Notes: a model not told the origin generated them from the letters alone. A stretch of 64,000 nucleotides of DNA from Macrostomum lignano (GCA_002269645.1 NIVC01000590.1:1-64000); one strand, 5' to 3'; shown: positions 36,333 to 53,884, counted from the first letter of the stretch. Program-made: numbers and translations.

Positions 36333-37530
36333 TTTTTTGCACAATCAGTGAGCAGATGGCCACTAATCTTTGCTTATTGCCATATTGCTTCTGGATAATC
36401 GAAACCATATGAAATGCTTTGTCAACTTGCAGGTTAAAATTGATTTGTAATCCCCTTACATATTTATTATTTTATTTTATACATCAGATTAGCACTGCTC
36501 TCCCCGATTAGCGCTGCTCTTAAAGCTTAGCGTAGCCCCAGCAAAAGTATCTACAAAATGAAAATGCTAAAAATTTGCATGAATCCTCATAGGAAACAAT
36601 GATTATTGTCACAAAGATAAATTCGCTGCTTCAATACAGACTCGAACTGCCGACCTTCTGCTAAAAGCCTTATACTATCCAAGAAGTTTAGTAACTTCGG
36701 CAGTTACTAAAACTTCTAATTCAAGATTCAAGATTCAAACTAAATTCAAGAAGTTTAGTAACTTCGGCAGTTTGAAGTTAACCCCCCCCCTGAAATCGGC
36801 AGTTATCTCCACAATATCCTGAAATTAGCTATCACTTCTAATCCCACAAACAGACTGCAGTCATACACTTAGCAGCCTGCAGATATCCACTGTGCCGTCT
36901 ACAACTTTCATTAACATCAGCAAACTACAATACTTCACTCAGCAGTCCGCAGTTATCCACTCAACAACTTGCACTAATTCTTCACAGCTATTATCCACTT
37001 TAAACTCTGTAGATAGTTATCCCCTCAACAGTTTGCTGCTATGCACTCATAAGTGTGGAGGAACTACCTCAGCAGTTTGTTCCATTTTTCCCTTTGCAGT
37101 CTGCATGAATGATCCCTTTGACAATCTGCAGTTCCCCTCAGCATCTTCTGTTCTCCTTTCCAATAATCTTCCAATCTTCCAATAATCTAAAAATGTGCTC
37201 AGCATTTTACGGCTCACTAAACAATTTTCAGTACATATCGGCATTCTTAAAAAGCTCAAAATTTGGCAATACCTTTAAGCAATTTTAACAGCATGGTCTG
37301 CAGTTTAATAGCAATTTCATACTTTCATGGTGCGAGGCAGTACTCGTTGATGGGATCAGTAATACACGAAGCAGTTTTTTAAAATCAAATTTGATAAGTG
37401 GCTTGTGCCAAGTAGCAAAAATTATTTGCTAATTAATAAAAAATGTTGCAATTAAAATTAATAAAAAATATGTTATATTTAGTCGAGTCACAAGCTACAA
37501 ATGAATGAATTTACTTATTTTAATTATCCA

Positions 37531-41500: not shown

Positions 41501-43700
41501 TTTGCATTAGCTATGGTTCACCAGCATATCAGCAATGCTTCACCAGTAGTTTAACAATGCTTCACCAGCAGTTTAGCAATGCTTCACCAGCAGTTTAGCA
41601 ATGCTTCACCAGCAGTTTAGCAATGATTCACCAGCACTGTTTTGCACAATCAGTAAGCAGATGGTCACTAATCTTTGCTTATTGCCATATTGTTTCTGGA
41701 TAATCGAAACCAAATGAAATGCTTTGTCAACTTGCAGGTTAAAATTGATTTGTAATCCCCTTACATATTTATTATTTTATTTTATACATCAGATTAGCAC
41801 TGCTCACCCCGATTAGCGCTGCTCTTAAAGCTTAGCGTAGCCCCAGCAAAAGTATCTACAAAATAAAAATGCTAAAAATTTGCATGAATCCTCATAGGAA
41901 ACAATGATTATTGTCACAAAGATAAATTCGCTGCTTCAATACAGACTCGAACCGCCGACCTTCTGCTAAAAGCCTTATAGTATTCAAGAAGTTTAGTAAC
42001 TTCGGCAGTTTGAAGTTAACCCCCCCCCTGAAATCGGCAGTTATCTCCACAACATCCTGAAATTAGCTATCACTTCTAATCCCACAAACAGACTGCAGTC
42101 ATACACTTAGCAGCCTGCAGATATCCACTGTGCCGTCTACAACTTTCATTAACATCAGCAAACTACAATACTTCACTCAGCAGTCCGCAGTTATCCACTC
42201 AACAACTTGCACTTAATTCTTCACAGCTATTATCCACTTTAAACTCTGTAGATAGTTATCCCCTCAACAGTTTGCTGCTATGCACTCATAAGTGTGGAGG
42301 AACTACCTCAGCAGTTTGTTCCATTTTTCCCTTTGCAGTCTGCATGAATGATCCCTTTGACAATCTGCAGTTCCCCTCAGCATCTTCTGTTCTCCTTTCC
42401 AATAATCTTCCAATCTTCCAATAATCTAAAAATGTGCTCAGCATTTTACGGCTCACTAAACAATTTTCAGTACATATCGGCATTCTTAAAAAGCTCAAAA
42501 TTTGGCAATACCTTTAAGCAATTTTAACAGCATGGTCTGCAGTTTAATAGCAATTTCATACTTTCATGGTGCGAGGCAGTACTCGTTGATGGGATCAGTA
42601 ATACACGAAGCAGTTTTTTAAAATCAAATTTGATAAGTGGCTTGTGCCAAGTAGCAAAAATTATTTGCTAATTAATAAAAAATGTTGCAATTAAAATTAA
42701 TAAAAAATATGTTATATTTAGTCGAGTCACAAGCTACAAATGAATGAATTTACTTATTTTAATTATCCACCGGGGAGGCGGACTCGAACCTTGGACCTTA
42801 CGCCTAGCCTAAACCTAGTCCTAGTGCCTACACTGCGGCTATTCCGCCTACTGATGGAAGGGCGCAAAAATCAGACATATATGCTTCGGCACTGCAGTCA
42901 AATACATAGCAGTGATAGCCTGCTCAGTGTGCACAGTTTTGGTGCTGGCAGAGCCATTGCACAGTTAAGTAAATCTCTCAATTTCAATACTTTTAACATG
43001 CAGTGGCTGATTTCTCTCTCCCTCCAGAGTGCCTGCGCAATGCTTGGCACACTGCCTCCTGCTGAAAAGCTCAGAGTCAGTTTATAGCGAGAATATGCAG
43101 TACGCAGTGGTGGCGCAATCATTTAGAATTGGAACGCTGCTTGGCCTTCCATTAAAAGCATTTAGATAAACTTATTTTTCGAATATTTAATACCTTTAGC
43201 ATTGAAGCAGATTAAAGAAATTTTAGCTGTCCTCTTTCCAGATAATTACAAAACTTTTGGCCAAAACGCGATCAAAATTGGTCAAGAATTGCAGTCTGTA
43301 GAGCGTTACGAAAAACAGATCTTTGACGCTTAAAGAGCTCGCTGCTAGCCTCCAGAATAATTTTATTTTTGACCTCTGGTATGGTTGCGCAATTTAAATA
43401 GAGTAATTATCTGGGCAGTGGGGCCCATGAGTTTTCTTATCAGTTCGCTCTGGCGCAATCAATTAAAATTGGCAGTGAAGTTTTTCGCTGATAAAATTTG
43501 CATTGAAAAAGCCCATTTGAAACAGTTTTTCGAATATTTAATCCCTTTAGCATTGAAGCAGATACAATAAATTTTAACCATACAATCCCAGGCTGATTAC
43601 AAATCTTTTGGCGAAAACGCGATCAAAATCGGTGAAGAATTGCAATCTCTAGAGCGTTATGGACAAGCATACAAACCTTAGAGATTTAGTATATTTAGAA
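38505..43700 (-). mobile_element. Non-autonomous Helitron, family C, copy 2; near-identical to 34213-38504
   Basis: CTAG plus hairpin at 38505-38530. Identical spurious ORFs at 35766/40980, 37047/42286 and 37501/42740 show a recent duplication. The family B-type 5' end motif (agtatatttagaag) recurs at ~43690-43700. Confidence 0.65.
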
Positions 43701-43702
43701 GG

Positions 43703-44060
43703 AAGGAAAAGAGTGACCTTGGTGGTCACAAAACTTAAAGTACATATTTTAGGGATGATAACGATATCTGTCTGTCTGTCTGTCTGTGTGTCTGTCTGTC
43801 TGTGTGTCTGTCTGTCTGTGTGTCTGTCTGTCTGTCTGTCTGTCTTAGCAGCTATCGTCTGTCTGTCTGTCTGTCTGTCGGTCTGTCTGTCTGTCTGTCT
43901 GGGCCTATCGTGTCTGTATCAATCATTATTGTGTGGGTCAACGAGCCAACCCGTAAAGTAGCATTTAAAATTCAGTTTTATCTGACAATTTCTTATGATC
44001 AGGGCCTAGACTCTTTAAAATGAAATTAACTAATTGATAAAAAATGAGCAAAGGTCTATC
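43703..44060 (-). mobile_element. Possible Helentron-associated (HINE/DINE-1-like) element, interrupted by the Gypsy insertion
   Basis: Hairpin GTGACC-TTGGT-GGTCAC at ~43713-43729 next to a (CTGT)n tract at 43766-43915. The far end was not identified. Confidence 0.35.
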
Positions 44061-45046
44061 TGATATAGTGATATAGTAATAATTGCTTATATTATGTATA
44101 TTACTCGTTAAATGCGTTATAAAAATTATATATCCATTTATTAGCAAAATATTTCTGTCTAATTGATCATTAAAAGTAGCCTAAATATCGTGTTTTGCCT
44201 CAAATACGCTTATAGTGCCTCTTATTTTTAATGTTTTGTTATAAATTGTCCGCCATTTTTACTAAAGTTACTATAAATATGAGCAAATAAATTTGTAGAG
44301 AGCCCAGACTTCTGTGGCCGCCTCTAGTAACAGGCTTTGCCTCTCGGCCAAATTGAACAGTTGTTCCAAAAATAGATCTGTCTATGAGTTATTCCTTTGA
44401 AGGCGCCCGCCTTTCCCCTTCCCCGAGAGGTCTTGTTCAGCTATAAGCGTACAGCCCTTTCTCCCTCCCCCCTCAGAGAACGTACAGTCTCTTACTGAGT
44501 AATATTTCTAACCCCCCTTTGTCCCTTATCAGTTGGACAGGCGTGAGGCCTCCCTTTCCCCGATCTCTAAGTAACCTGGCGAATTGCCAACTCCTTATCC
44601 AGACACACTGTCTGCTTAGGCGTCATGCCTTTAGCTAATTCCCCATTAAGGCATATCCTTCCCATGTCAGCATTCCCTATTAGCTATTAAATTCCCCCTT
44701 TTGTGCGCCCCGTTTCCCAGGCAACTCCGATCCATCGCGTAGCCCTCCCTCGGACTAGTTAAGTTTAATTTAGACAGTGTCTTGCCGCTCGGACACTCAC
44801 GCCACCAGGAGCAACCATTGGCTTACTCCTATTAGTAATAAAACTAGCATATCTTTCGGAAATCCCAAGAATCCCCTCCCCCCACAACAGATTTGGTGTC
44901 AGAATAGGAAAACTTCCCCTCCCCCCAAGACCCCTGTAACAGAAATTGGTAGCAACATTGTGATTAAACCACAGGCGAAAGTTTACCCTGTAACAGATTT
45001 TGGTAACAGCGGTAGGATTTTCTTAATAATAAACAGCCCTATAACA
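44061..45046 (+). repeat. 5' LTR (986 bp)
   Basis: Direct repeat of 52503-53486; AATAAA at 44837-44842. Confidence 0.97.
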
Positions 45047-45051
45047 GATTT

Positions 45052-45064
45052 TGGTGGCAGCGGT
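45052..45064 (+). promoter_or_regulatory. Primer-binding site used by this copy (tRNA-Leu AAG/TAG type)
   Basis: TGGTGGCAGCGGT begins 5 nt after the LTR end and complements the metazoan tRNA-Leu 3' end ...ACCGCTGCCACCA. Confidence 0.8.
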
Positions 45065-45135
45065 AAAGGATCTGAATCTGGTGAAACGCGCACTTAAACC
45101 AACCCAAACTCTAAACCCCCTATCCTTGAAGTATA

Positions 45136-46125
45136 ATGGCCGCAGGAATCAATGAAGCCCTTGCGCTCTTAGCTGAAGAGCTCCGCAACCGACTCGAATT
45201 AGGCCCCCTCAGACATGTAAAGATCCAGAAGTACCTTCCCAGCCAAGATATCAGAGTCTGGCTTACCGCATTTGACCAGAGATGTGAAAATGAAGGCATA
45301 GAAGAAGAAAACCGGAAGCAGGAACTGCTTACCAATCTAGACCTGAGTACTGCGTTTGCAGCAGTTCAACGCCTCAACCTCCCAGCTAATCTCCCCTATG
45401 AAGAATTCAAAGAAAGACTAATCGAAAGATTTGGAAAAGTAGGTAGCTCCGCTGAATTTCGCGAAGAGTTTAGGAATCGCTGCCAAGGCAGAAACGAATC
45501 CACTGACAGTTTTGCCGATGCTTTGATTGAATTAGCTTCCCGCGCATTCCTAAATATGGATGCTGAGCAGAGAGAAGAAGAACTGGTCGAACAGTTCATC
45601 AAAGGTGTGAGAACCCCTCCCGACACCCGTGAGAAGCTGATCTTTGCCCAACCGGCTAGTCTCCAAGCCGCCCGCAGAATGCTGCGCAGAATTGAAGCTG
45701 CTTATCAGATGTCCCACAAAGGAGGAATTAGAGTGACCAAGGATGAGAAAGAGGAGCACAAGGTCAGAACCGATCAGTTGATCATTGACCAGCAGACTAA
45801 GATTGATCGCCAAGAAAGGCTTATTCAGAACCTGCAGAAGCAACTGGCTGAAACAGCGCAATGCGCTCCGCCATCTCAGGTGTTCCCCCAGCAACAGTAT
45901 AGGCAGCCACCTCCTCAGCAGTACAGACATCCAAACCCTCAGCTGTACAGACAGCCACCCCAGCAGCAGTACAGGCCGCAACCTCAGCAGCAGTACAGGC
46001 CCCAGCTGATAAACCAACCGCCAAGGCGTGAACCCCCAAGAAGGAATGAGCGTCAGCCCCCCAATCCCAGATATGAGCCGCTGAAGTTCCGCAACCCCCG
46101 TGACTCCCAGAAGTCGGGAAACTGA
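45136..46125 (+). CDS. gag: Gag (329 aa)
   Basis: ORF after the PBS with capsid-like FKERLIERFG..FRNRCQGRNES..FADAL..LA..EQFIKG and a Q/P-rich C-terminus; no CCHC knuckle seen. Confidence 0.85.
   Translation: MAAGINEALALLAEELRNRLELGPLRHVKIQKYLPSQDIRVWLTAFDQRCENEGIEEENRKQELLTNLDLSTAFAAVQRLNLPANLPYEEFKERLIERFGKVGSSAEFREEFRNRCQGRNESTDSFADALIELASRAFLNMDAEQREEELVEQFIKGVRTPPDTREKLIFAQPASLQAARRMLRRIEAAYQMSHKGGIRVTKDEKEEHKVRTDQLIIDQQTKIDRQERLIQNLQKQLAETAQCAPPSQVFPQQQYRQPPPQQYRHPNPQLYRQPPQQQYRPQPQQQYRPQLINQPPRREPPRRNERQPPNPRYEPLKFRNPRDSQKSGN
46116..46122 (+). promoter_or_regulatory. -1 ribosomal frameshift slippery heptamer G GGA AAC
   Basis: X XXY YYZ in the gag frame immediately before the gag TGA; the -1 frame is open for about 100 codons. 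Confidence 0.7.
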
Positions 46126-49100
46126 GAAGCCAGGGTCGAGTTAAGAGGCCACGCCCCTCAGGCCAAAATTCTGCTTACTCTCCGGCCTCCCCATCATTCG
46201 AAAATGCCCCCCAACCAAAATACCGGCAACCTCCTCAGTACGGTTTCCGTTATCCCCGCAAAACCTCCCATGTACAGCCAATGCCTGTGAATAATGCGAT
46301 ATCTGTCTCCCCCAATAATTTTTCACTTCTTGCCTTTGACGAAATCGACGATGCCATGCCAAATGCCCCCCCCCTGACCCCCATGTGTACAATGACCCCC
46401 ATGCGACTACAGCTCACGCGACTGCTTCCCATGTAACCAATGCGATTTCTGCTCATCACGCGTCCGCACCCCATGTACCCACTGCGCTTGCACCCCATGT
46501 ATCCTATGCGATTAAAACCTATAATGCTTTATTCAGTGCTGGAACCCGCTCAAAGAAGCGACAAAAGCCAAAACCCAATTCCCCATCCCGAATCGACCTG
46601 ACTAAGCTAGAAGGCTATGAAGCTGTAATTGTCGGCGAAATCCAGAAAGAATCGATTGATTTCTTGCTAGACACAGGCGCCAGAAATAATTTCCTGAGCC
46701 GCTCAACCTGGTCTAAGCTATTCCGTGCCGATCAAATCCGAGACACTAGCAAAAGCATTAGTACATTTGACGGTACCCCAGTTCAATTAGAAGGAGAAGT
46801 ATCCGCCCAAGTGAAATTTGGCGATATCCAAATCGAAGTTGATTTCCTCCTATGCCGACATGATTGTGACAATATTCTAGGTATGAATTTTTCCTATCCC
46901 AATGTGAAAGCATTCAGCTAGCCAAAGGAATGCTAGTGCTTAATGAAGGTACCTGTATACCCATGCAGTATACACGCCTACCCGTGAAAGTTTGCCGAGT
47001 TTATACTCAAGAAAGAGTAATCATCCCAGCTAATAGTGCCCTCCGAATACCCGTGAAATTAGCCAAGAATTGTGAATCGAATTATGGCACCCCCATGACC
47101 ATTGAAGCCATTGGCGATACTGTCCGAACCCGTGATTTCTCATTAGAAATGGTTCCAACACTAGTAACTATGAAAGAAGGCAAAGGAATTGTTGAAATTA
47201 TTAACCGCCATCCAGTAGATGTGAATCTAACTAAAACTTCCCTAATTGGCTTAGCCAGACCCATGAAAGCTAAAGATCTAACCTATTGGCAAACCCCAAC
47301 TCCCAACCCCCAACCCCCTGTGAAAGTCAACCAGACTCAATGTACTGAAGATTCCTGGATTAATGAAGTGAGCCTTGGCCCTGAACTGTCGGATGAACAG
47401 CGTAAAGCAGTCATCGATCTTATGAAAGAAAACCGTGAAGCCTTTTCCCAGAACGAATTAGACATGGGCCTGACACACTTAGTAACCCACGAAATCTCCA
47501 TCAAAGACCCCACCCCCGTTAGAATCCCAGCTAGACGCATCCCCCCGCACTTGCAAAAGCAAGTTGACGCCCAATTAGACGATATGTTAGCCAAAAACCT
47601 AATTAGACCCTGTATTCAACCTACTCCACTCCCCTAGTAATTGTCCCCAAGAAAGATGGTTCTATTAGAATCGTGAGCGATTTCCGCGTACTCAACTCAA
47701 GAGTTAATTACTACCCCTACCCCCTCCCTAATATTCAAGAGACCTTCTCCCACCTAACTGGTAGCCAATACTTTAGCAGCCTAGACTTAAACTCAGGATA
47801 CTGGCAAGTCCCCATCAAAGAAGAAGACAAGCATCGAACCGCCTTCTCCACCCTAACTAGAGGCCAATTTGAATACCAAGTAATGGCCCAAGGACTTTCC
47901 AATGCCCCCGGAACCTTCCAACGCCTAATGAATTTAGTACTATTAGGAATTCAACACAAGTTCGCCATGTCCTATATCGATGACATAATCGCCTACTCCC
48001 AAACTTTTGCCGACCATTTAGATCACCTAAGAGAAGTGTTTAAGCGACTAATTGCCGCAGGTCTGAAATTGAGACCCAAAAAGTGCAATCTTTTCCATCA
48101 CGAGTTGAAATATCTAGGACACGTGATTGGCCGACAAGGCATCAGAACAGATGAAGCCAAAATAGAAGCTATCAAAACTTGGCCCCGTCCCAAAGACGTA
48201 AAGGAACTACGCAGTTTTCTTGGCCTATGCAATTATTATTGCCGATTCGTGAAAAATTATGCCGAAGTGGCTCACCCCCTATTTCAATTGACCCGAAAAG
48301 GAGTTCAGAATTTCCTATCTAAGTGGAGCAAAGTGCATGACGAAGCCTTCGAGTCCCTGAAGCAGCGAATGATGTCCACTGAAGTGTTAGCCTACCCCGA
48401 ATATGTCGAAGACGAAAATGTGAAAATGGTGCTCGACACAGATGCCAGTGACGACAGGATTGGCGCATGCCTTGGCCAAATCCAGAGTGATGGCATAGAG
48501 CGACCAATAGCCTATTTTAGTAGAGCAATGAAGGAATCAGAGAAGCGATACCCCATTACTCGGAAAGAATTGTTAGCCCTTGTCGACGCTATGAGGCATT
48601 TCAGATTTTATCTGATCGGCAAGAAATTCTTAGCCCGAACTGATCATAAAGCGATAATTTGGCTCATGAGACAAACTGAAGCAACCGGAATCCTAGGAAG
48701 ATGGATAGAGCGCCTAAATGAATTCAGGTTCGACATTGAACACAGAAGCGGCGCAAAACATTCCAATGCCGACGGATTGTCGAGAAGACCAGCTGAGATA
48801 GCTGAAGCCCCTGAAGTATCCCCTGAAGTAGCCCCTGAACTTGCTGAAACAGCACCTGAAGTTTCTGAAGTCCCTGACGCAGCCACTGAGCCTGCTGAAG
48901 CGATCCTTGAAACCCCTGAAATATCTGAAGTAATTTCTGAGAACCCTGAGCCAATCCCTGAGAAAGTTGAGAAATTGACCCCTGTTCCCCTGAGAGATGC
49001 GAGTGCTCCCGCTGAAACTAAGGACAACCCCATGTCCCAGTCACCTGAAGCCCTGACAGAAAGCGAGACCCAGACCGAATGTCCCGAATCTAGGACAATG

Positions 49101-50969
49101 CTGAATGTCTCAGGTAGAGAAGTAGATGAAAGAGAAGAAGAAACAGGAAAGTGTGAAAAACTATTAACTGATTATCTTCCCAGCCCTCTGAAGAAAGAAC
49201 AGATTATAGAAGCCCAAGTCGCTGACCCCATCATTAAAGCTCTATTAGAAGCTAAAGCCCAGAAATTGAGCCAATTTCCCAAATCACCGGACGTGCCAGA
49301 AAAGATCAGTAAGCATTATGCACTGATGAAAATCGATAACGAATTATTAATAATCACCGAAGGCGAAAAGGACAAAGTAGTTTTGCCCCCATCCTTAGAT
49401 AAAGCAGTCTTTATTGACCTACACTACAGCCCCCTCGCAGGACATCTAGGAAGAGATAAGACGCTCCAGAGAATCCGAGAAAGATTTTGGCGACCCGGAT
49501 TGAGTACCTCAGTTGAGCAGTTGATTGCTGAGTGCATCCCCTGTCTCGAGAGTAAGAAAGGCCACTTTGTGCAAGCTCCTATCCAATCGTTCCCCATTGG
49601 CGAAGCTTTCAGCCGCCTGCACATAGACATTATCGGCCCGATCTCAAAAGAGAGTAAGCGAGGTCACAAATATGTTTTAACAATTGTTGATAGCACAACT
49701 AGATATCCCTTTGCTTTTCCCATTAGAAATCAAAAATCAGACACAGTCATTAAAATACTACTTGAACGAATAGTAGCAGAGTATGGACAGCCAACATGGA
49801 TTCACACGGACAATGGAAAAACCTTTGCTAGTAAACAGTTTAAGGCATTTTGTGAATTATATAATATTCGCCACACCTTCACTACCCCCTATCATGCCCA
49901 ATCTAACGGATTAGTAGAACGCTTTAATAAGCAAGTTAAATCGATCATCACCTGCCTGATCAATAAGGATCATGGTGATTGGGATTTATTAATTCCCGCA
50001 GCTTTAGTAGCCGTTCGCACCAGCCCCAATGCAACAACAGGATTTTCCCCGCACTTTCTACTATTTGGAAGAGAAGCTACTCTACCCTTAGACACTCAAA
50101 TTCGTAGTACAGCAGAGCATGCCGACTATCCCGCCTATATATCCAAACATGCTGAAAGATTAGAAGAAGCTAGCAAAATCGTTAAGAGGAAATTAGAAAA
50201 AGTGACAGAGAAAAGACAGATAGCCGCTGAAACTAATAAACTTCCCCCCAGAGTCCCCATAGGCTGTTTAGCATTAATTAACAACCCCCAATTAGACACC
50301 GAAGAGTCCCACAAATTTCATCGGAAGAAACGATCAGCATTTAGAGTGATAGCTCAAATTTCTGAAGTAGTTTTTAAAGTTCAAAAAGAAGAAGACGGAA
50401 AATTAATTGGCAAAGAAATGTTAGTGCACCGAGACAATTTAACGCCCGTGCCCAATTCAACCACAGAACTTTTTACTAAGGAAAGCCAGGAGAGCGCTCC
50501 CGCTTATGTTTCCGCCCCCAACCCCGCTCCTATTCCTATTTCCGCCCCTACTTCCGCCCCTACCCCCGCTTCAACTGAACCGAAGAGACAACTCCCAATT
50601 AAGGAAAGCCACCCCCGCCGGAAAATCCCAGAATTAAATCAGTCCAACCCTATTGAATCTGAAGAATCATCTGACGAAGAAGAAATCAATTGGCGATGCC
50701 AACTAAGAGAAGAGAATAATGAAGGAGAAATAGCTGAAGAATGGTCTGAAGCTCAGACAGAGAATGAAGAGACCAATGAGTCAGAAAACGAAGCCTTGAA
50801 TGAAGAAGACCCTCAACCCCTACCCCCCTCTCCTGTCCCGCAAGATCCCGAGCCCGCGCACACCCACCCCTACAATCTGAGGCGCCCAACCCAAGCCAAA
50901 CAAAGATGTGACTGCCATCTGAAACGTCTATTGAAAGCCCTCAATTTATTGCGTAACCTCGAATTTTAG
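46116..50969 (+). CDS. pol: Pol polyprotein (PR-RT-RNase H-IN), split here by three single-base losses
   Basis: Protease LLDTGA; RT YPLP..LDLNSGYWQV..TAF..QGLSNAPGTFQR..YIDD; RNase H LDTDAS..YFSR..ELLAL..TDHKA; integrase H-H-C-C (HYSPLAGH..CIPC) and D,D,E (HIDIIG, TDNG, GLVERFN). Breaks near 46366-46374, 46888-46892 and ~47613. Confidence 0.93.
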
Positions 50970-51280: not shown

Positions 51281-52185
51281 ATGACCTCTGGAGACGAGCT
51301 TCAACGATTAGAAGAAGAACTTGCCCTCTCGGATAGTAATGCTAGCGAGTTCGATCACGAGGAAGAGAATGACCCCAGCCCTCCTGAGCGCCAGCCAACT
51401 CGTCCCAACAAGCCTGGAGCTAAGCCTAGAAGATTGCGTCAGTCGTGACCCGCCCGCCAGCTAAGCCAGTCAGCAGTTCGCCCCAAGAACGCAAGCGTCT
51501 ACTAGAGCAACAAGCTGCCGCCCCTGTGGAGCCTTCGGCCGACATTGTCCGCCGTCAACCCTCAGGCTCTCGCGCCGCCCAAGTCCTACCCCCGAGTGAG
51601 GCGCCGCCCATCATGCGCCGAGTACGCGAAAACCAGACCGTCAAGCAAGAGCCCAGGGAACGTTCAAGATCTCCGGCGAAGCCTTTAGTTACGCCACCGC
51701 CCCAGTATGGCGTCAGGCCGCCCCACCAAGCGAGGCCCGGCCCCTCCAACCCAATGCCAATCGATCTACGCGTACAGGTTCCGCCCCTAATGGCTAATGC
51801 AGAGCCACGAAGGCCCCCACTCCAAGAGTTAGGCAGAGATTTCAACCAAATCGTATCAGGTCTCCCCGAGTTCCGCCGTGCCCAATTCCGGCAGCAAATC
51901 GTCACCCTGAAGCATTATCTAGTGAAGGTTGGTCGCTTCCGCCTCGATGGAAGGATGTTTCCCCAAAGGGTGGAAGTCTCGGCAGCCCTCGAAGACCTGC
52001 TGCGCATGCAGCAGGCGCAGGCTATAGCTGCCTGGCGCCGCGCCACCGTCTACGCTTTACAAGACTTGTCCCGCGGCAATCGTCAGTACAATCGCGAGAA
52101 CGTGGCCACTGAAGTACTCTGGATCGGCCAAAGCTGCGGCTGGCCCGACCCGGATGGTCTACCTTGCGAGTTCCGATGGAATTAA
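51281..52185 (+). CDS. Extra ORF3 of unknown function between pol and the 3' LTR (~300 aa if one missing base near 51430 is restored)
   Basis: ATG at 51281 (MTSGDELQRLEEELALSD...) reads to a stop at 51446-51448. The overlapping -1 frame is open from 51430 to 52185 (246-aa ORF in the track). Confidence 0.6.
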
Positions 52186-52502
52186 CTGAAGTAGCAATAG
52201 TATTGCATGACATTTTTTCGAACATTTATTTTTGCGAAATAATTACTAACCATTACGACATTTTAACATCTTTGTGCCTAATAAACGTTATAGTCATGAA
52301 TTATTTTGTAGTAAACTTTTGTAATTTTGCATTTTTCTTTTTTTTTAGCATGCATTCTTCGCCTGATAAATTTTGTTGCCACTTATTCTCCGCATTAAAT
52401 TCAACTACTCTTTTCATACTACTATAATCCATGTAAATGCGTTTTTTAAGAATTTTGTCTCACTAATAAATATATTCGCAAAATTCGTTCAGGAAAGCCA
52501 GT

Positions 52503-53486
52503 TGATATAGTGATATAGTAATAATTGCTTATATTATGTATATTACTCGTTAAATGCGTTATAAAAATTATATATCCATTTATTAGCAAAATATTTCTGT
52601 CTAATTGATCATTAAAAGTAGCCTAAATATCGTGTTTTGCCTCAAATACGCTTATAGTGCCTCTTATTTTTAATGTTTTGTTATAAATTGTCCGCCATTT
52701 TTACTAAAGTTACTATAAATATGAGCAAATAAATTTGTAGAGAGCCCAGACTTCTGTGGCCGCCTCTAGTAACAGGCTTTGCCTCTCGGCCAAATTGAAC
52801 AGTTGTTCCAAAAATAGATCTGTCTATGAGTTATTCCTTTGAAGGCGCCCGCCTTTCCCCTTCCCCGAGAGGTCTTGTTCAGCTATAAGCGTACAGCCCT
52901 TTCTCCCTCCCCCCTCAGAGAACGTACAGTCTCTTACTGAGTAATATTTCTAACCCCCCTTTGTCCCTTATCAGTTGGACAGGCGTGAGGCCTCCCTTTC
53001 CCCGATCTCTAAGTAACCTGGCGAATTGCCAACTCCTTATCCAGACACACTGTCTGCTTAGGCGTCATGCCTTTAGCTAATTCCCCATTAAGGCATATCC
53101 TTCCCATGTCAGCATTCCCTATTAGCTATTAAATTCCCCCTTTTGTGCGCCCCGTTTCCCAGGCAACTCCGATCCATCGCGTAGCCCTCCCTCGGACTAG
53201 TTAAGTTTAATTTAGACAGTGTCTTGCCGCTCGGACACTCACGCCACCAGGAGCAACCATTGGCTTACTCCTATTAGTAATAAAACTAGCATATCTTTCG
53301 GAAATCCCAAGAATCCCCCCCCCACAACAGATTTGGTGTCAGAATAGGAAAACTTCCCCTCCCCCCAAGACCCCTGTAACAGAAATTGGTAGCAACATTG
53401 TGATTAAACCACAGGCGAAAGTTTACCCTGTAACAGATTTTGGTAACAGCGGTAGGATTTTCTTAATAATAAACAGCCCTATAACA
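52503..53486 (+). repeat. 3' LTR (984 bp)
   Basis: Direct repeat of the 5' LTR. Confidence 0.97.
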
Positions 53487-53884
53487 TATCAAAAGTCGAA
53501 GCCATGCTTTATTAACTTGTCCTTATCAACAGGCTCAAAATCAAGAACTGATTAGTCAACGGTTAAACAAGTTCAGCTCTAAAATTTTTCCCAATTGGTT
53601 TTTATCATTTTCAAAAGCACTTGCCAAACTTCTGGGCAGAAAAGTTCCAAATTAAAGTCGGCCCAGACACACCAGCCCGGGTTTGGAAGCCTACGACGAA
53701 TTTGGGTGTCTCAGGACGCATTTTAAAGAGCCAACTGCCCTGACTGTGAGTGCCATGCGCTATCAGCTCAACCCCGTGGTTTCCAAGCGACGGTTTTAAA
53801 TAATAGTATCTTTTAAATAGCAGAGAAAAGCTAATTTTCTGGTGATAACAAAATAAAAAGAAAGGAGACAGACTGCTTAAATTC

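What the first reader, a model, noticed from the sequence alone, without database searches (positions are those of the whole stretch)
44881..45072. Array of four LTR-end + tRNA primer-binding-site modules in the Gypsy U5, each with a different PBS
Seen: after AATAAA, the motif CCC(T)RYAACA-GA(W)1-3-TGGT recurs with termini ending at 44889, 44941, 44995 and 45046 (periods 52, 54, 51). The conserved part is the element's own integrase terminus (...CTATAACA). Each terminus is followed by a different PBS-shaped sequence: TGGTGTCAGAATAGGA, TGGTAGCAACATTGTGAT, TGGTAACAGCGGTAGGAT and TGGTGGCAGCGGTAAAGGAT. The ~30-nt spacers are unrelated, giving a repeat-spacer layout. Known: the first matches the tRNA-Leu(CAA) end (TGGTGTCAGAAGTGGGAT) over 11 nt and the fourth matches tRNA-Leu(AAG/TAG) (TGGTGGCAGCGGTGGGAT) over 13 nt. 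The second and third have exact 18-nt PBS geometry, with G16 opposite tRNA C61 and T19 opposite A58. Only module 4 lies outside the LTR; modules 1-3 are copied into the 3' LTR (~53322-53486). Inference: this is a cassette of alternative priming sites. Priming at any module would give a valid, shorter LTR with a correct terminus and keep the downstream modules in the leader. That could allow tRNA switching, escape from 3'-tRF silencing of one PBS, or be a record of successive PBS acquisitions. I know of no described element with this architecture.
Basis: partly seen in the sequence, partly recalled or inferred. Interest (0 to 1): 0.9.

Follow-up and report, generated by a model that had tools for sequence, protein, structure and literature searches.

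The report
Repeated LTR-end plus primer-site units
The end of this flatworm Gypsy retrotransposon's LTR is built from four repeats of "LTR tip plus tRNA-Leu primer site"; only the last looks like a working primer site, and relatives show such arrays growing by duplication, giving a natural record of how LTRs lengthen and primer sites turn over.

Summary
A young Ty3/Gypsy element has its 5' LTR at 44061-45046, its 3' LTR at 52503-53486 and a TATC target duplication. It carries four units of [CCCYRYAACA][4-5 nt][TGGTNNCA...] whose tips end at 44889, 44941, 44995 and 45046. Chance expectation is 0.03 matches per window.

- All four primer-like parts read as variants of one tRNA-Leu site, not four different tRNAs.
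- Module 4 keeps 13 perfect bases to tRNA-Leu(AAG/TAG).
- Modules 2 and 3 keep only 4 perfect bases.
- Module 1 has an 11-base prefix of tRNA-Leu(CAA).

The architecture is not a one-off. Arrays of 3-6 such units, about 52 nt apart, occur in at least six related LTR lineages, mostly from Macrostomum lignano. One M. lignano copy (L009) carries a fresh 54-nt duplication. Its LTR ends at the upstream unit, which has a perfect tRNA-Leu site. The parental variant unit sits downstream in the leader.

Best reading: duplication of the U5+PBS junction during reverse transcription, with older units absorbed into the LTR and their primer sites disabled.

No LTR in 8 insertions ends at an old internal unit. 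The strong conservation of the tip-like cores is unexplained. Host tRNA genes could not be examined.

The parts
44057..44060 (+). Target-site duplication TATC, left copy. The right copy is at 53487-53490.
   Evidence: flanks read ...GGTCTATC|TGATATAG and ...CTATAACA|TATCAAAAG
44061..45046 (+). 5' LTR, 986 bp, from TGATATAG to CTATAACA
   Evidence: It is identical to the 3' LTR except for a 2-bp indel at 44876-7.
44061..44076 (+). Doubled terminal 8-mer TGATATAG TGATATAG at the U3 start. It is the inverted counterpart of the U5 tip.
   Evidence: M. lignano relatives start TGTACTAG TGCTATAG.
44777..44796 (+). Conserved 20-nt inverted repeat GTGTCTTGCCGCTCGGACAC in the LTR, upstream of the array
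   Evidence: It is identical in L001 633-652 and near-identical in M. lignano LTR fragments (L009 20147, L012 ~15903).
44837..44842 (+). First AATAAA. If this is the poly(A) signal, modules 1-4 lie in U5.
44880..44912 (+). Module 1: tip-like CCCCACAACA (to 44889), gap GATT, primer-like TGGTGTCAGAATAGGAAAA
   Evidence: It has an 11-nt perfect prefix to Leu(CAA) and is 11/19 identical to Leu(AAG/TAG).
44932..44965 (+). Module 2: CCCTGTAACA (to 44941), gap GAAAT, primer-like TGGTAGCAACATTGTGATT
   Evidence: It is 14/19 identical to Leu(AAG/TAG), with a perfect prefix of only 4 nt.
44986..45019 (+). Module 3: CCCTGTAACA (to 44995), gap GATTT, primer-like TGGTAACAGCGGTAGGATT
   Evidence: It is 16/19 identical to Leu(AAG/TAG) with a 4-nt perfect prefix. 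It is near-identical to M. lignano unit x2, TGGTTACAGCGGTAGGATT (p<0.002).
45028..45033 (+). Second AATAAA, 13 nt before the LTR end. In the M. lignano relatives the only AATAAA is at the equivalent place, between the last two units.
45037..45046 (+). Module 4 tip: CCCTATAACA, the real right end of the LTR
   Evidence: Both LTRs end here.
45052..45073 (+). Working primer-binding site TGGTGGCAGCGGTAAAGGATCT, following the gap GATTT (45047-45051)
   Evidence: The first 13 nt are complementary to the 3' end of tRNA-Leu(AAG/TAG). All 22 nt are identical in L001.
45136..46125 (+). gag ORF, 329 aa, without a CCHC knuckle
   Evidence: (weak Retrotrans_gag hit)
46385..50969 (+). pol region: protease, RT, RNase H and integrase, read in three frames
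   Evidence: One search places frame changes near 46.9 kb and at 47613, relative to M. lignano P0127.
52491..52497 (+). Candidate polypurine tract AGGAAAG, 5 nt upstream of the 3' LTR
   Evidence: The M. lignano relatives have AGAGGAGGAAAGT directly abutting the LTR.
52503..53486 (+). 3' LTR. It carries copies of modules 1-3 (tips ending 53329, 53381, 53435) and ends at the module-4 tip (53477-53486).

Best explanation
The array is a stack of old and current 'LTR end + primer-binding site' junctions of a flatworm Ty3/Gypsy retrotransposon that is primed by tRNA-Leu.

What is shown:
- Only the last unit (tip 45037-45046, PBS 45052-45073) defines the LTR end in this copy.
- That last unit keeps a usable match to tRNA-Leu(AAG/TAG).

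What is inferred:
1. New units arise during reverse transcription, when the second (plus-strand) jump at the PBS goes wrong. The result is a tandem duplicate of one U5+PBS piece of about 52 nt. The upstream copy carries the sequence copied from the tRNA. The downstream copy carries the inherited one.
2. If a later cycle primes at the downstream copy, the upstream unit is swallowed into the LTR. From then on it is copied to both LTRs.
3. A swallowed unit can stay internal only if its primer site stops working. This would explain why internal units have typically lost PBS positions 5-6, next to the primer's 3' end.

Repeating this cycle gives an LTR whose last ~200 nt is made of such units. On this reading modules 1-3 are disabled relics. 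Module 1 probably dates from a cycle primed by tRNA-Leu(CAA). The array need not have a function of its own.
For: - LTR limits and target duplication put the only used end at 45046.
- All primer-like parts align to the Leu(AAG/TAG) 3'-end complement (11-19 of 19). Perfect prefixes are 8-19 nt in the seven LTR-adjacent sites but only 3-5 nt in most internal ones.
- TGGTGG is intact in 7 of 7 LTR-adjacent sites and 6 of 18 internal ones (Fisher p=0.005).
- The working PBS is identical over 22 nt between the window and L001 (Gag 60% identical). The internal tails are not significantly alike.
- Arrays of 3-6 units with a period near 52 nt occur in L001, M. lignano family A, and three further M. 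lignano LTR ends.
- Within M. lignano family A (LTRs ~96% alike), copies carry either a perfect Leu PBS (L008, L012) or a variant (L006, L010, L011). L009 has both in tandem: c1 is perfect and sits at the LTR end, and c2 is the variant in the leader, 54 nt on. L009 also has two extra internal units.
- The L009 duplication starts 16 nt after the family's only AATAAA, at the predicted R/U5 border, so the unit equals one U5+PBS.
- Progeny inheriting either the tRNA's or the genome's PBS sequence is established retrovirology (PMC4549124).
Against: - The tip-like cores are far better conserved than the rest of each unit. Core identity is 88-95%, against 43-49% for PBS positions 5-19 (p = 1e-6 to 3e-10). 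Plain neutral relics should not show this.
- The window's spacers are not copies of one another, unlike the fresh L009 duplication.
- The duplication mechanism is inferred from a single intermediate.
- A misaligned template switch between co-packaged RNAs with different PBS alleles would give the same product.
- Yeast Ty1 and Ty3 are reported to inherit the PBS from the RNA only (PMC7472051), so tRNA templating is not guaranteed in this clade.
- Host tRNA genes were not available. A host tRNA matching modules 2 or 3, or the odd tail of module 4, cannot be excluded.
- Only one copy of the window's own family was seen.
Confidence: 0.55

Rival explanations
1. Working cassette of alternative priming sites. 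Several modules are used, by different tRNAs or by the same tRNA. Copies would then toggle between shorter and longer LTRs, and the element could switch primer or evade silencing of one PBS.
For: - Every module keeps a valid CA tip at the right distance (4-5 nt) from TGGT.
- The cores are strongly conserved.
- L009 shows an LTR ending at a unit that is not the last one.
- Module 1 has an 11-nt prefix of Leu(CAA), and a second array has TGGTGTCAG.
- Short PBSs of 8-11 nt work in Ty3 and in Drosophila Gypsy (PMC1635307).
- Engineered two-PBS retroviral vectors are reported to initiate at both sites. I know this from the title of Voronin & Pathak 2004 and from memory for its content.
Against: - Modules 2 and 3 pair with tRNA-Leu over only 4 contiguous bases at the primer's 3' end.
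- Their would-be tRNAs would need U72/U71, which is unusual for cytosolic tRNAs (background knowledge).
- Internal primer-like tails are not conserved between relatives, while the working PBS is.
- None of 8 insertions (window, L007-L012) ends at an old internal unit.
Confidence: 0.2
2. The conserved cores, not the primer parts, are the functional pieces. They would be subterminal repeats of the LTR tip that bind integrase (as DNA) or Gag (as RNA) and help end recognition or packaging, in the way DNA transposons carry several transposase sites per end.
For: - The core is much more conserved than the rest of the unit.
- Lineage-specific gap sequence is shared by all units of an array: GAWWT in the window, (A)ATT in L001, ACTT in M. 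lignano.
- The other LTR end also starts with a doubled terminal 8-mer, in two lineages.
- Arrays persist in at least six lineages.
Against: - There is no direct evidence.
- Known retroviral intasomes contact only the terminal ~20 bp (background knowledge).
- Unit number and content vary between near-identical copies, 3 against 6 in M. lignano family A. This argues against a fixed requirement.
- The RNA is not unusually structured (z = +2.1).
Confidence: 0.15
3. Ordinary genomic tandem duplication or replication slippage in this one copy, followed by neutral decay, with no link to reverse transcription.
For: The period is regular (51-54 nt), and the window is extremely rich in tandem repeats.
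Against: - Modules 1-3 are identical in both LTRs, so they predate this insertion.
- The same architecture is present in at least six related lineages.
- Unit borders coincide with replication landmarks: the LTR tip, the end of the 19-nt PBS, and the predicted R/U5 border.
- Decay is strongly uneven along the unit.
Confidence: 0.05

Closest known systems
Ty3/Gypsy (Metaviridae) LTR retrotransposons of Macrostomum lignano (families surveyed in PMC12801592)
   Same: - TG..CA LTRs, a 4-bp target duplication, gag, PR-RT-RNaseH-IN order, and a tRNA-complementary PBS next to the 5' LTR.
- The nearest proteins are M. lignano Pol (63%) and Gag (66%).
   Different: - The survey paper contains no occurrence of 'PBS', 'tRNA' or 'primer binding', so the repeated tip+PBS units are not described there.
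- The window's own family is not in the protein collection.
Retroviral PBS inheritance and PBS mismatch variants (HIV/SIV in PMC4549124; mouse ERVs in PMC7472051)
   Same: - Copies of one family carry either a perfect tRNA match or a common mismatched variant. This is as expected if progeny inherit either the tRNA copy or the genomic PBS.
- The mismatches lie in the part that a 3'-tRF seed would pair with.
   Different: In those systems the PBS is single. Here old junctions pile up as an array inside the LTR.
Engineered retroviral vectors with two primer-binding sites (Voronin & Pathak 2004, J Virol 78:5402; seen only as a cited title)
   Same: Two PBSs in one leader, and initiation at either changes how much sequence ends up in U5.
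   Different: - Those constructs are artificial, with two perfect sites and no duplicated LTR tip.
- I could not read the paper, so its content is from memory.
Bipartite or double PBS of yeast Ty3 and Drosophila Gypsy (PMC1635307)
   Same: More than one tRNA-binding segment in one Gypsy-type element.
   Different: - There the second site lies at the 3' end of the RNA and pairs with a different part of the same tRNA. It carries no LTR tip.
- Here the units are tandem, all mimic the tRNA's 3' end, and each has an LTR tip.

Membership tests
Ty3/Gypsy LTR retrotransposon | Two near-identical LTRs starting TG and ending CA, flanked by a short target-site duplication | tested here: met
   986/984 bp, one 2-bp indel, TG...CA, TSD TATC
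Ty3/Gypsy LTR retrotransposon | Domain order protease - RT - RNase H - integrase | tested here: met
   The reading frame changes twice relative to M. lignano P0127.
Ty3/Gypsy LTR retrotransposon | PBS complementary to a tRNA 3' end just downstream of the 5' LTR | tested here: met
   45052-45064 are 13 perfect bases to the Leu(AAG/TAG) 3' end published for human. The host tRNA was not available.
Ty3/Gypsy LTR retrotransposon | Polypurine tract abutting the 3' LTR | tested here: inconclusive
   Only AGGAAAG at 52491-52497, separated from the LTR by CCAGT.
   Against human Leu tRNAs the perfect prefixes are module 1 = 11 nt (CAA), modules 2 and 3 = 4-5 nt, and module 4 = 13 nt. No host tRNA genes were found in the window or any locus.
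Multi-PBS alternative-priming cassette | Different copies or solo LTRs of a family end at different modules | tested here: inconclusive
   - Only one copy of the window's family was available.
- In M. lignano family A, 5 of 6 insertions end at the last unit. One (L009) ends at the second-to-last of a fresh pair. None ends at old units a or b.
Multi-PBS alternative-priming cassette | The primer-like parts of internal modules are conserved between related elements, as the working PBS is | tested here: not met
   w1-l1, w2-l2 and w3-l3 give p = 0.07-0.18, while w4-l4 gives p < 0.002. The exception is module 3 against M. lignano x2 (p < 0.002).
Multi-PBS alternative-priming cassette | Minus-strand strong-stop DNA starts at more than one module | not testable with these tools
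   This needs cDNA or VLP sequencing from the host.
Simple tandem repeat (minisatellite) | Head-to-tail copies alike along the whole unit | tested here: not met
   TRF finds no array here at score 30. Only the ~20-nt cores are alike, and the tails and spacers are unrelated.

The most novel reading that the evidence does not exclude
The array is kept by selection as a working device of this flatworm Gypsy clade. Each unit would be a spare LTR end plus primer site, letting the element shift its LTR boundary and renew or change its PBS. That could include switching between tRNA-Leu isoacceptors, or to mismatched forms that escape 3'-tRF silencing. Alternatively, or in addition, the conserved tip-like cores are subterminal binding sites needed by integrase or Gag. 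Either would be a cis-acting architecture not described for LTR retroelements.
Probability: 0.3. Interest if true: 0.8.

Novelty: new variant of a known kind. Interest (0 to 1): 0.6.

Why it matters
LTR boundaries and primer sites are usually treated as fixed landmarks. Here a whole clade of elements keeps a visible stack of former LTR-end/PBS junctions. One copy is caught just after adding a unit.

This matters in three ways:
- It gives a natural, sequence-level record of how U5 and the LTR grow.
- It shows how a PBS is re-copied from the tRNA or drifts away from it, and how old primer sites are silenced.
- If the conserved cores or spare sites turn out to be used, it would add a new kind of cis-element to retroelement biology. 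It would also bear on the arms race between tRNA priming and tRNA-fragment silencing.

There is a practical point too. Such arrays will mislead LTR and PBS annotation tools, which expect one PBS outside the LTR.

Tried and rejected
- Exact look-up of the window's Gag in the assembly collection found nothing on record. P0002 was also not on record.
- A profile search with five Gag sequences gave no new relatives, probably because Q-rich words swamped the candidates.
- A metagenome scan for the 20-nt working PBS returned two chance bacterial or phage hits, L004 and L005.
- tRNA and Rfam scans of the window and all loci found no tRNA genes and no RNA families, so the host tRNA test could not be done.
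- RNA-structure idea: the region 44770-45140 folds worse than shuffles (z = +2.1). Rejected.
- Idea that the spacers are read-through copies of the tRNA beyond position 19: local alignments to human tRNA-Leu are not significant for the window units (p > 0.14). Only weak hints appear in L001 and L002. Rejected for the window.
- Unit-by-unit orthology between the window and L001: the collinear MAFFT alignment is carried by the cores. The tails are not significantly alike, so an old shared array and independent growth cannot be told apart.
- Link to loss of the Gag zinc knuckle: the window and L001 lack CCHC, but M. lignano family A has it and also has arrays. Rejected.
- Literature searches for natural multiple, tandem or duplicated PBSs found no description of such arrays. 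'PBS' is a noisy search term, so absence is weak evidence.
- Voronin & Pathak 2004 is not held.

Full report
**1. What is there**

The finding lies at the right end of the 5' LTR of a Ty3/Gypsy retrotransposon.
- The LTRs are 44061-45046 and 52503-53486. They differ only by a 2-bp indel at 44876-7, begin with TG and end with CA, and are flanked by the 4-bp duplication TATC.
- Between them lie gag (45136-46125), a protease ORF and RT-RNase H-integrase.
- Compared with the single pol ORF of the nearest relative, the window's pol is read in three frames. The shifts are near 46.9 kb and at 47613.

- The tips CCCCACAACA, CCCTGTAACA, CCCTGTAACA and CCCTATAACA end at 44889, 44941, 44995 and 45046.
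- Each is followed by a 4-5-nt gap (GATT, GAAAT, GATTT, GATTT) and by TGGTNNCA.
- The motif occurs nowhere else in 64 kb except in the 3' LTR copies of modules 1-3. Chance expectation is 0.03.
- The last tip is the true LTR end, so only module 4's primer part lies outside the LTR.

**2. Host and relatives**

The closest proteins come from the flatworm Macrostomum lignano: Gag 66% and Pol 63% identical. LTR fragments 75-85% identical to the window's LTR lie in M. lignano contigs. The host is therefore a Macrostomum or a close relative. The window's own family is not in the protein collection.

I fetched these related sequences:
- three short assemblies carrying Gag relatives (L001-L003);
- one more distant M. 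lignano element (L007);
- six M. lignano loci with copies of one family, here called 'family A' (L006, L008-L012).

**3. The architecture is a trait of the clade**

- L001 (Gag 60% identical) has four units at 52, 64 and 49-nt spacing. Its last primer part is identical to the window's over 22 nt, TGGTGGCAGCGGTAAAGGATCT.
- Family A has three units (a, b, c) in five insertions and six units in L009.
- Three further M. lignano LTR ends carry 3-5 units each and finish with a bare tip, as a 3' or solo LTR should. They are L012 ~16.0 kb, L009 20.1-20.5 kb, and L009 18.2-18.4 kb on the minus strand.
- L007 has one working site and one relic 200 nt upstream.
- Spacing is usually 47-57 nt.

**4. Which tRNA**

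The published 3' fragment of human tRNA-Leu(AAG/TAG) is ATCCCACCGCTGCCACCA (PMC10591036). Full human Leu tRNAs are given in PMC10359600. Its complement, TGGTGGCAGCGGTGGGAT(T), is present perfectly next to the LTR in L003, in L008 and L012, and in L009 c1.

| Window module | Identity to Leu(AAG/TAG) site | Perfect prefix |
|---|---|---|
| 1 | 11 of 19 | 5 nt (11 nt to Leu(CAA)) |
| 2 | 14 of 19 | 4 nt |
| 3 | 16 of 19 | 4 nt |
| 4 | 13 of 19 | 13 nt |

- No other Leu tRNA fits modules 2 or 3 better.
- Module 1 matches Leu(CAA) at exactly the three positions where CAA and AAG differ.
- A unit in another array begins TGGTGTCAG. One past switch between Leu isoacceptors is therefore plausible.
- The 'PBS geometry' of modules 2 and 3 (G16, T19) is inherited from the Leu site.

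So the modules are variants of one primer site, or at most two closely related Leu sites. They are not four different tRNA sites. This rests on human tRNAs. No host tRNA gene was present in any sequence I could reach.

**5. Working versus internal units**

Across the clade I compared seven distinct LTR-adjacent sites with 18 internal ones.
- All seven LTR-adjacent sites keep TGGTGG. Only 6 of the 18 internal ones do (p = 0.005).
- Within internal units, positions 5-6 are the most often changed of the first ten: 14 of 36 sites, against 14 of 72 for positions 7-10 (p = 0.04). These positions lie next to the primer's 3' end.
- TGGT itself helped me to find the units, so its conservation is partly ascertainment. 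Some units are homologous, so the counts are not fully independent.
- The working PBS is conserved over 22 nt between the window and L001. The internal tails are not significantly alike.
- In the eight insertions where both LTRs can be read (window, L007-L012), every LTR ends at the unit that abuts the leader. None ends at an old internal unit.

**6. A unit being added**

Family A copies have LTRs about 96% alike, yet they differ at the junction.
- L008 and L012 carry the perfect Leu site.
- L006, L010 and L011 carry the variant TGGTGGCAGCGATAAGGATT.
- L009 carries both in tandem. Its two LTRs are 99.9% alike and its target duplication is ATCT.

The L009 junction reads: [GTTTAGAAAGACAGAGCCAAAAGGCCTGTCACA GC perfect site][GTTCAGAAAGACAGAGCCAAAAGGCCTGTCACA GC variant site].
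- Both L009 LTRs end at the first CACA.
- The second unit therefore lies in the leader, with a valid tip and the PBS that other copies use.
- The duplicated piece starts 16 nt after the only AATAAA of that LTR, at the predicted R/U5 border. It stops at the end of the 19-nt tRNA copy. It is thus one U5+PBS.

In retroviruses the plus strand of the PBS is copied from the tRNA and the minus strand from the genome. Progeny inherit either (PMC4549124). Mismatched 'common' PBS variants coexist with perfect ones in mouse ERV families (PMC7472051).

My inferred sequence of events is this:
1. A variant-PBS parent was primed by tRNA-Leu.
2. The tRNA-templated 3' end of the plus-strand strong-stop DNA could not pair properly with the variant minus-strand PBS.
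3. The jump was resolved out of register, which gave the duplication.
4. If a later cycle primes at the downstream unit, the upstream unit becomes part of the LTR.

A misaligned switch between co-packaged RNAs carrying the two PBS alleles would give the same product. Yeast Ty elements are reported not to copy the tRNA. This step is therefore inference from one intermediate.

**7. What does not fit a pure relic model**

- In the window, the tip plus TGGT is 88-95% identical between modules. PBS positions 5-19 are 43-49% identical (p = 1e-6 to 3e-10).
- The window's spacers are unrelated to one another.
- The gap sequence is lineage-specific yet shared by all units of an array.

Part of the contrast could be there from birth, since the tRNA-templated and inherited PBS differ from the start. 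The spacers, however, should then resemble each other as they do in L009. Selection on the cores therefore remains open. They could act as spare ends, or as integrase or Gag sites. The other LTR end also begins with a doubled terminal 8-mer in two lineages.

Two other ideas failed. The RNA is not unusually structured. The spacers are not tRNA read-through.

The odd tail of the working PBS is shared across lineages: GGTAAAGGATCT here and in L001, GATAAGGATT in M. lignano. Either a variant host tRNA-Leu templates it, or the mismatches are selected. They fall where the seed of an 18-nt 3'-tRF would pair, which fits the priming-versus-silencing trade-off proposed for ERVs. This is untested here.

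**8. Position in the transcript**

There is a second AATAAA at 45028, 13 nt before the LTR end. In family A the only AATAAA lies at the equivalent place, between the last two units. Whether modules 1-3 are in U5 or in R cannot be settled without RNA ends.

**9. Comparison with known systems and novelty**

- The element is an ordinary member of the Ty3/Gypsy group by every feature I could test. The polypurine tract is weak.
- Bipartite or double tRNA sites are known in Ty3 and Drosophila Gypsy. Those lie at opposite ends of the RNA and pair with different parts of the tRNA.
- Two-PBS retroviral vectors are artificial.
- I found no description of natural tandem arrays of LTR tip plus PBS. The M. 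lignano LTR-retrotransposon survey does not mention PBSs.

I rate the finding as a new variant of a known kind. It is a real, clade-wide and polymorphic architecture. Its best explanation is a replication by-product that records LTR growth and PBS turnover. I give about a 30% chance that the units or their cores are functional.

Noticed in passing
window 44061-44076; L008 333-348, L006 7738-7758: The U3 start is a doubled terminal 8-mer (TGATATAG TGATATAG). M. lignano relatives start TGTACTAG TGCTATAG. Both LTR ends therefore carry repeated tip motifs.
   Followed up: partly
window 44777-44796 and 53219-53238; L001 633-652; L009 ~20147; L012 ~15903: A 20-nt inverted repeat, GTGTCTTGCCGCTCGGACAC, is identical in the window and L001 and near-identical in M. 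lignano LTR fragments, although the surrounding LTR has diverged. It may be a promoter or R-region element.
   Followed up: partly
window ~46885-46981 and 47613: The pol region matches the single M. lignano pol ORF (P0127) in three different frames, so this copy has two frame changes or assembly indels despite near-identical LTRs.
   Followed up: partly
window 45136-47700; L001 1012-1974: Gag of the window element and of L001 has a Q/P-rich tail and no CCHC zinc knuckle in any frame. M. lignano family A has CYNCGKLGHMARNC.
   Followed up: yes
window 51445-52185: A 246-aa ORF lies between integrase and the 3' LTR, with no Pfam match.
   Followed up: no
L002 48-85: The PBS of this relative runs on into a complete T-arm-like hairpin (GTGAG ATTAGAA CTCAC), about 30 nt of tRNA-like complementarity with a 2-nt insertion in the acceptor part.
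   Followed up: partly
L006 7735-24077; L008 1-9044: M. lignano family A copies occur as tandem LTR-internal-LTR-internal-LTR arrays that share LTRs.
   Followed up: no
L012 6356-6634 and 15840-16170: A family A element is inserted (TSD ATTT) into an LTR 75-85% identical to the window's LTR. This shows that window-like elements exist in M. lignano.
   Followed up: partly
L009 8190-8330 versus L008 950-1010: Between units a and b, L009 has a ~120-nt segment with two extra units in place of 44 nt in its siblings. A similar x2 unit lies in another LTR at L009 18.3 kb (minus strand). This suggests recombination between subfamilies within the array.
   Followed up: partly
window 4.3-7.2, 14.9-18.7, 21.8-22.7, 24.5-25.0, 26.7-29.6, 35.7-36.5, 53.8-54.4 and 55.0-55.5 kb; 36975-37274 = 42214-42513: The window is packed with minisatellites of period 8-30 nt and with ~5.2-kb segmental repeats. 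The retrotransposon sits between such arrays.
   Followed up: no
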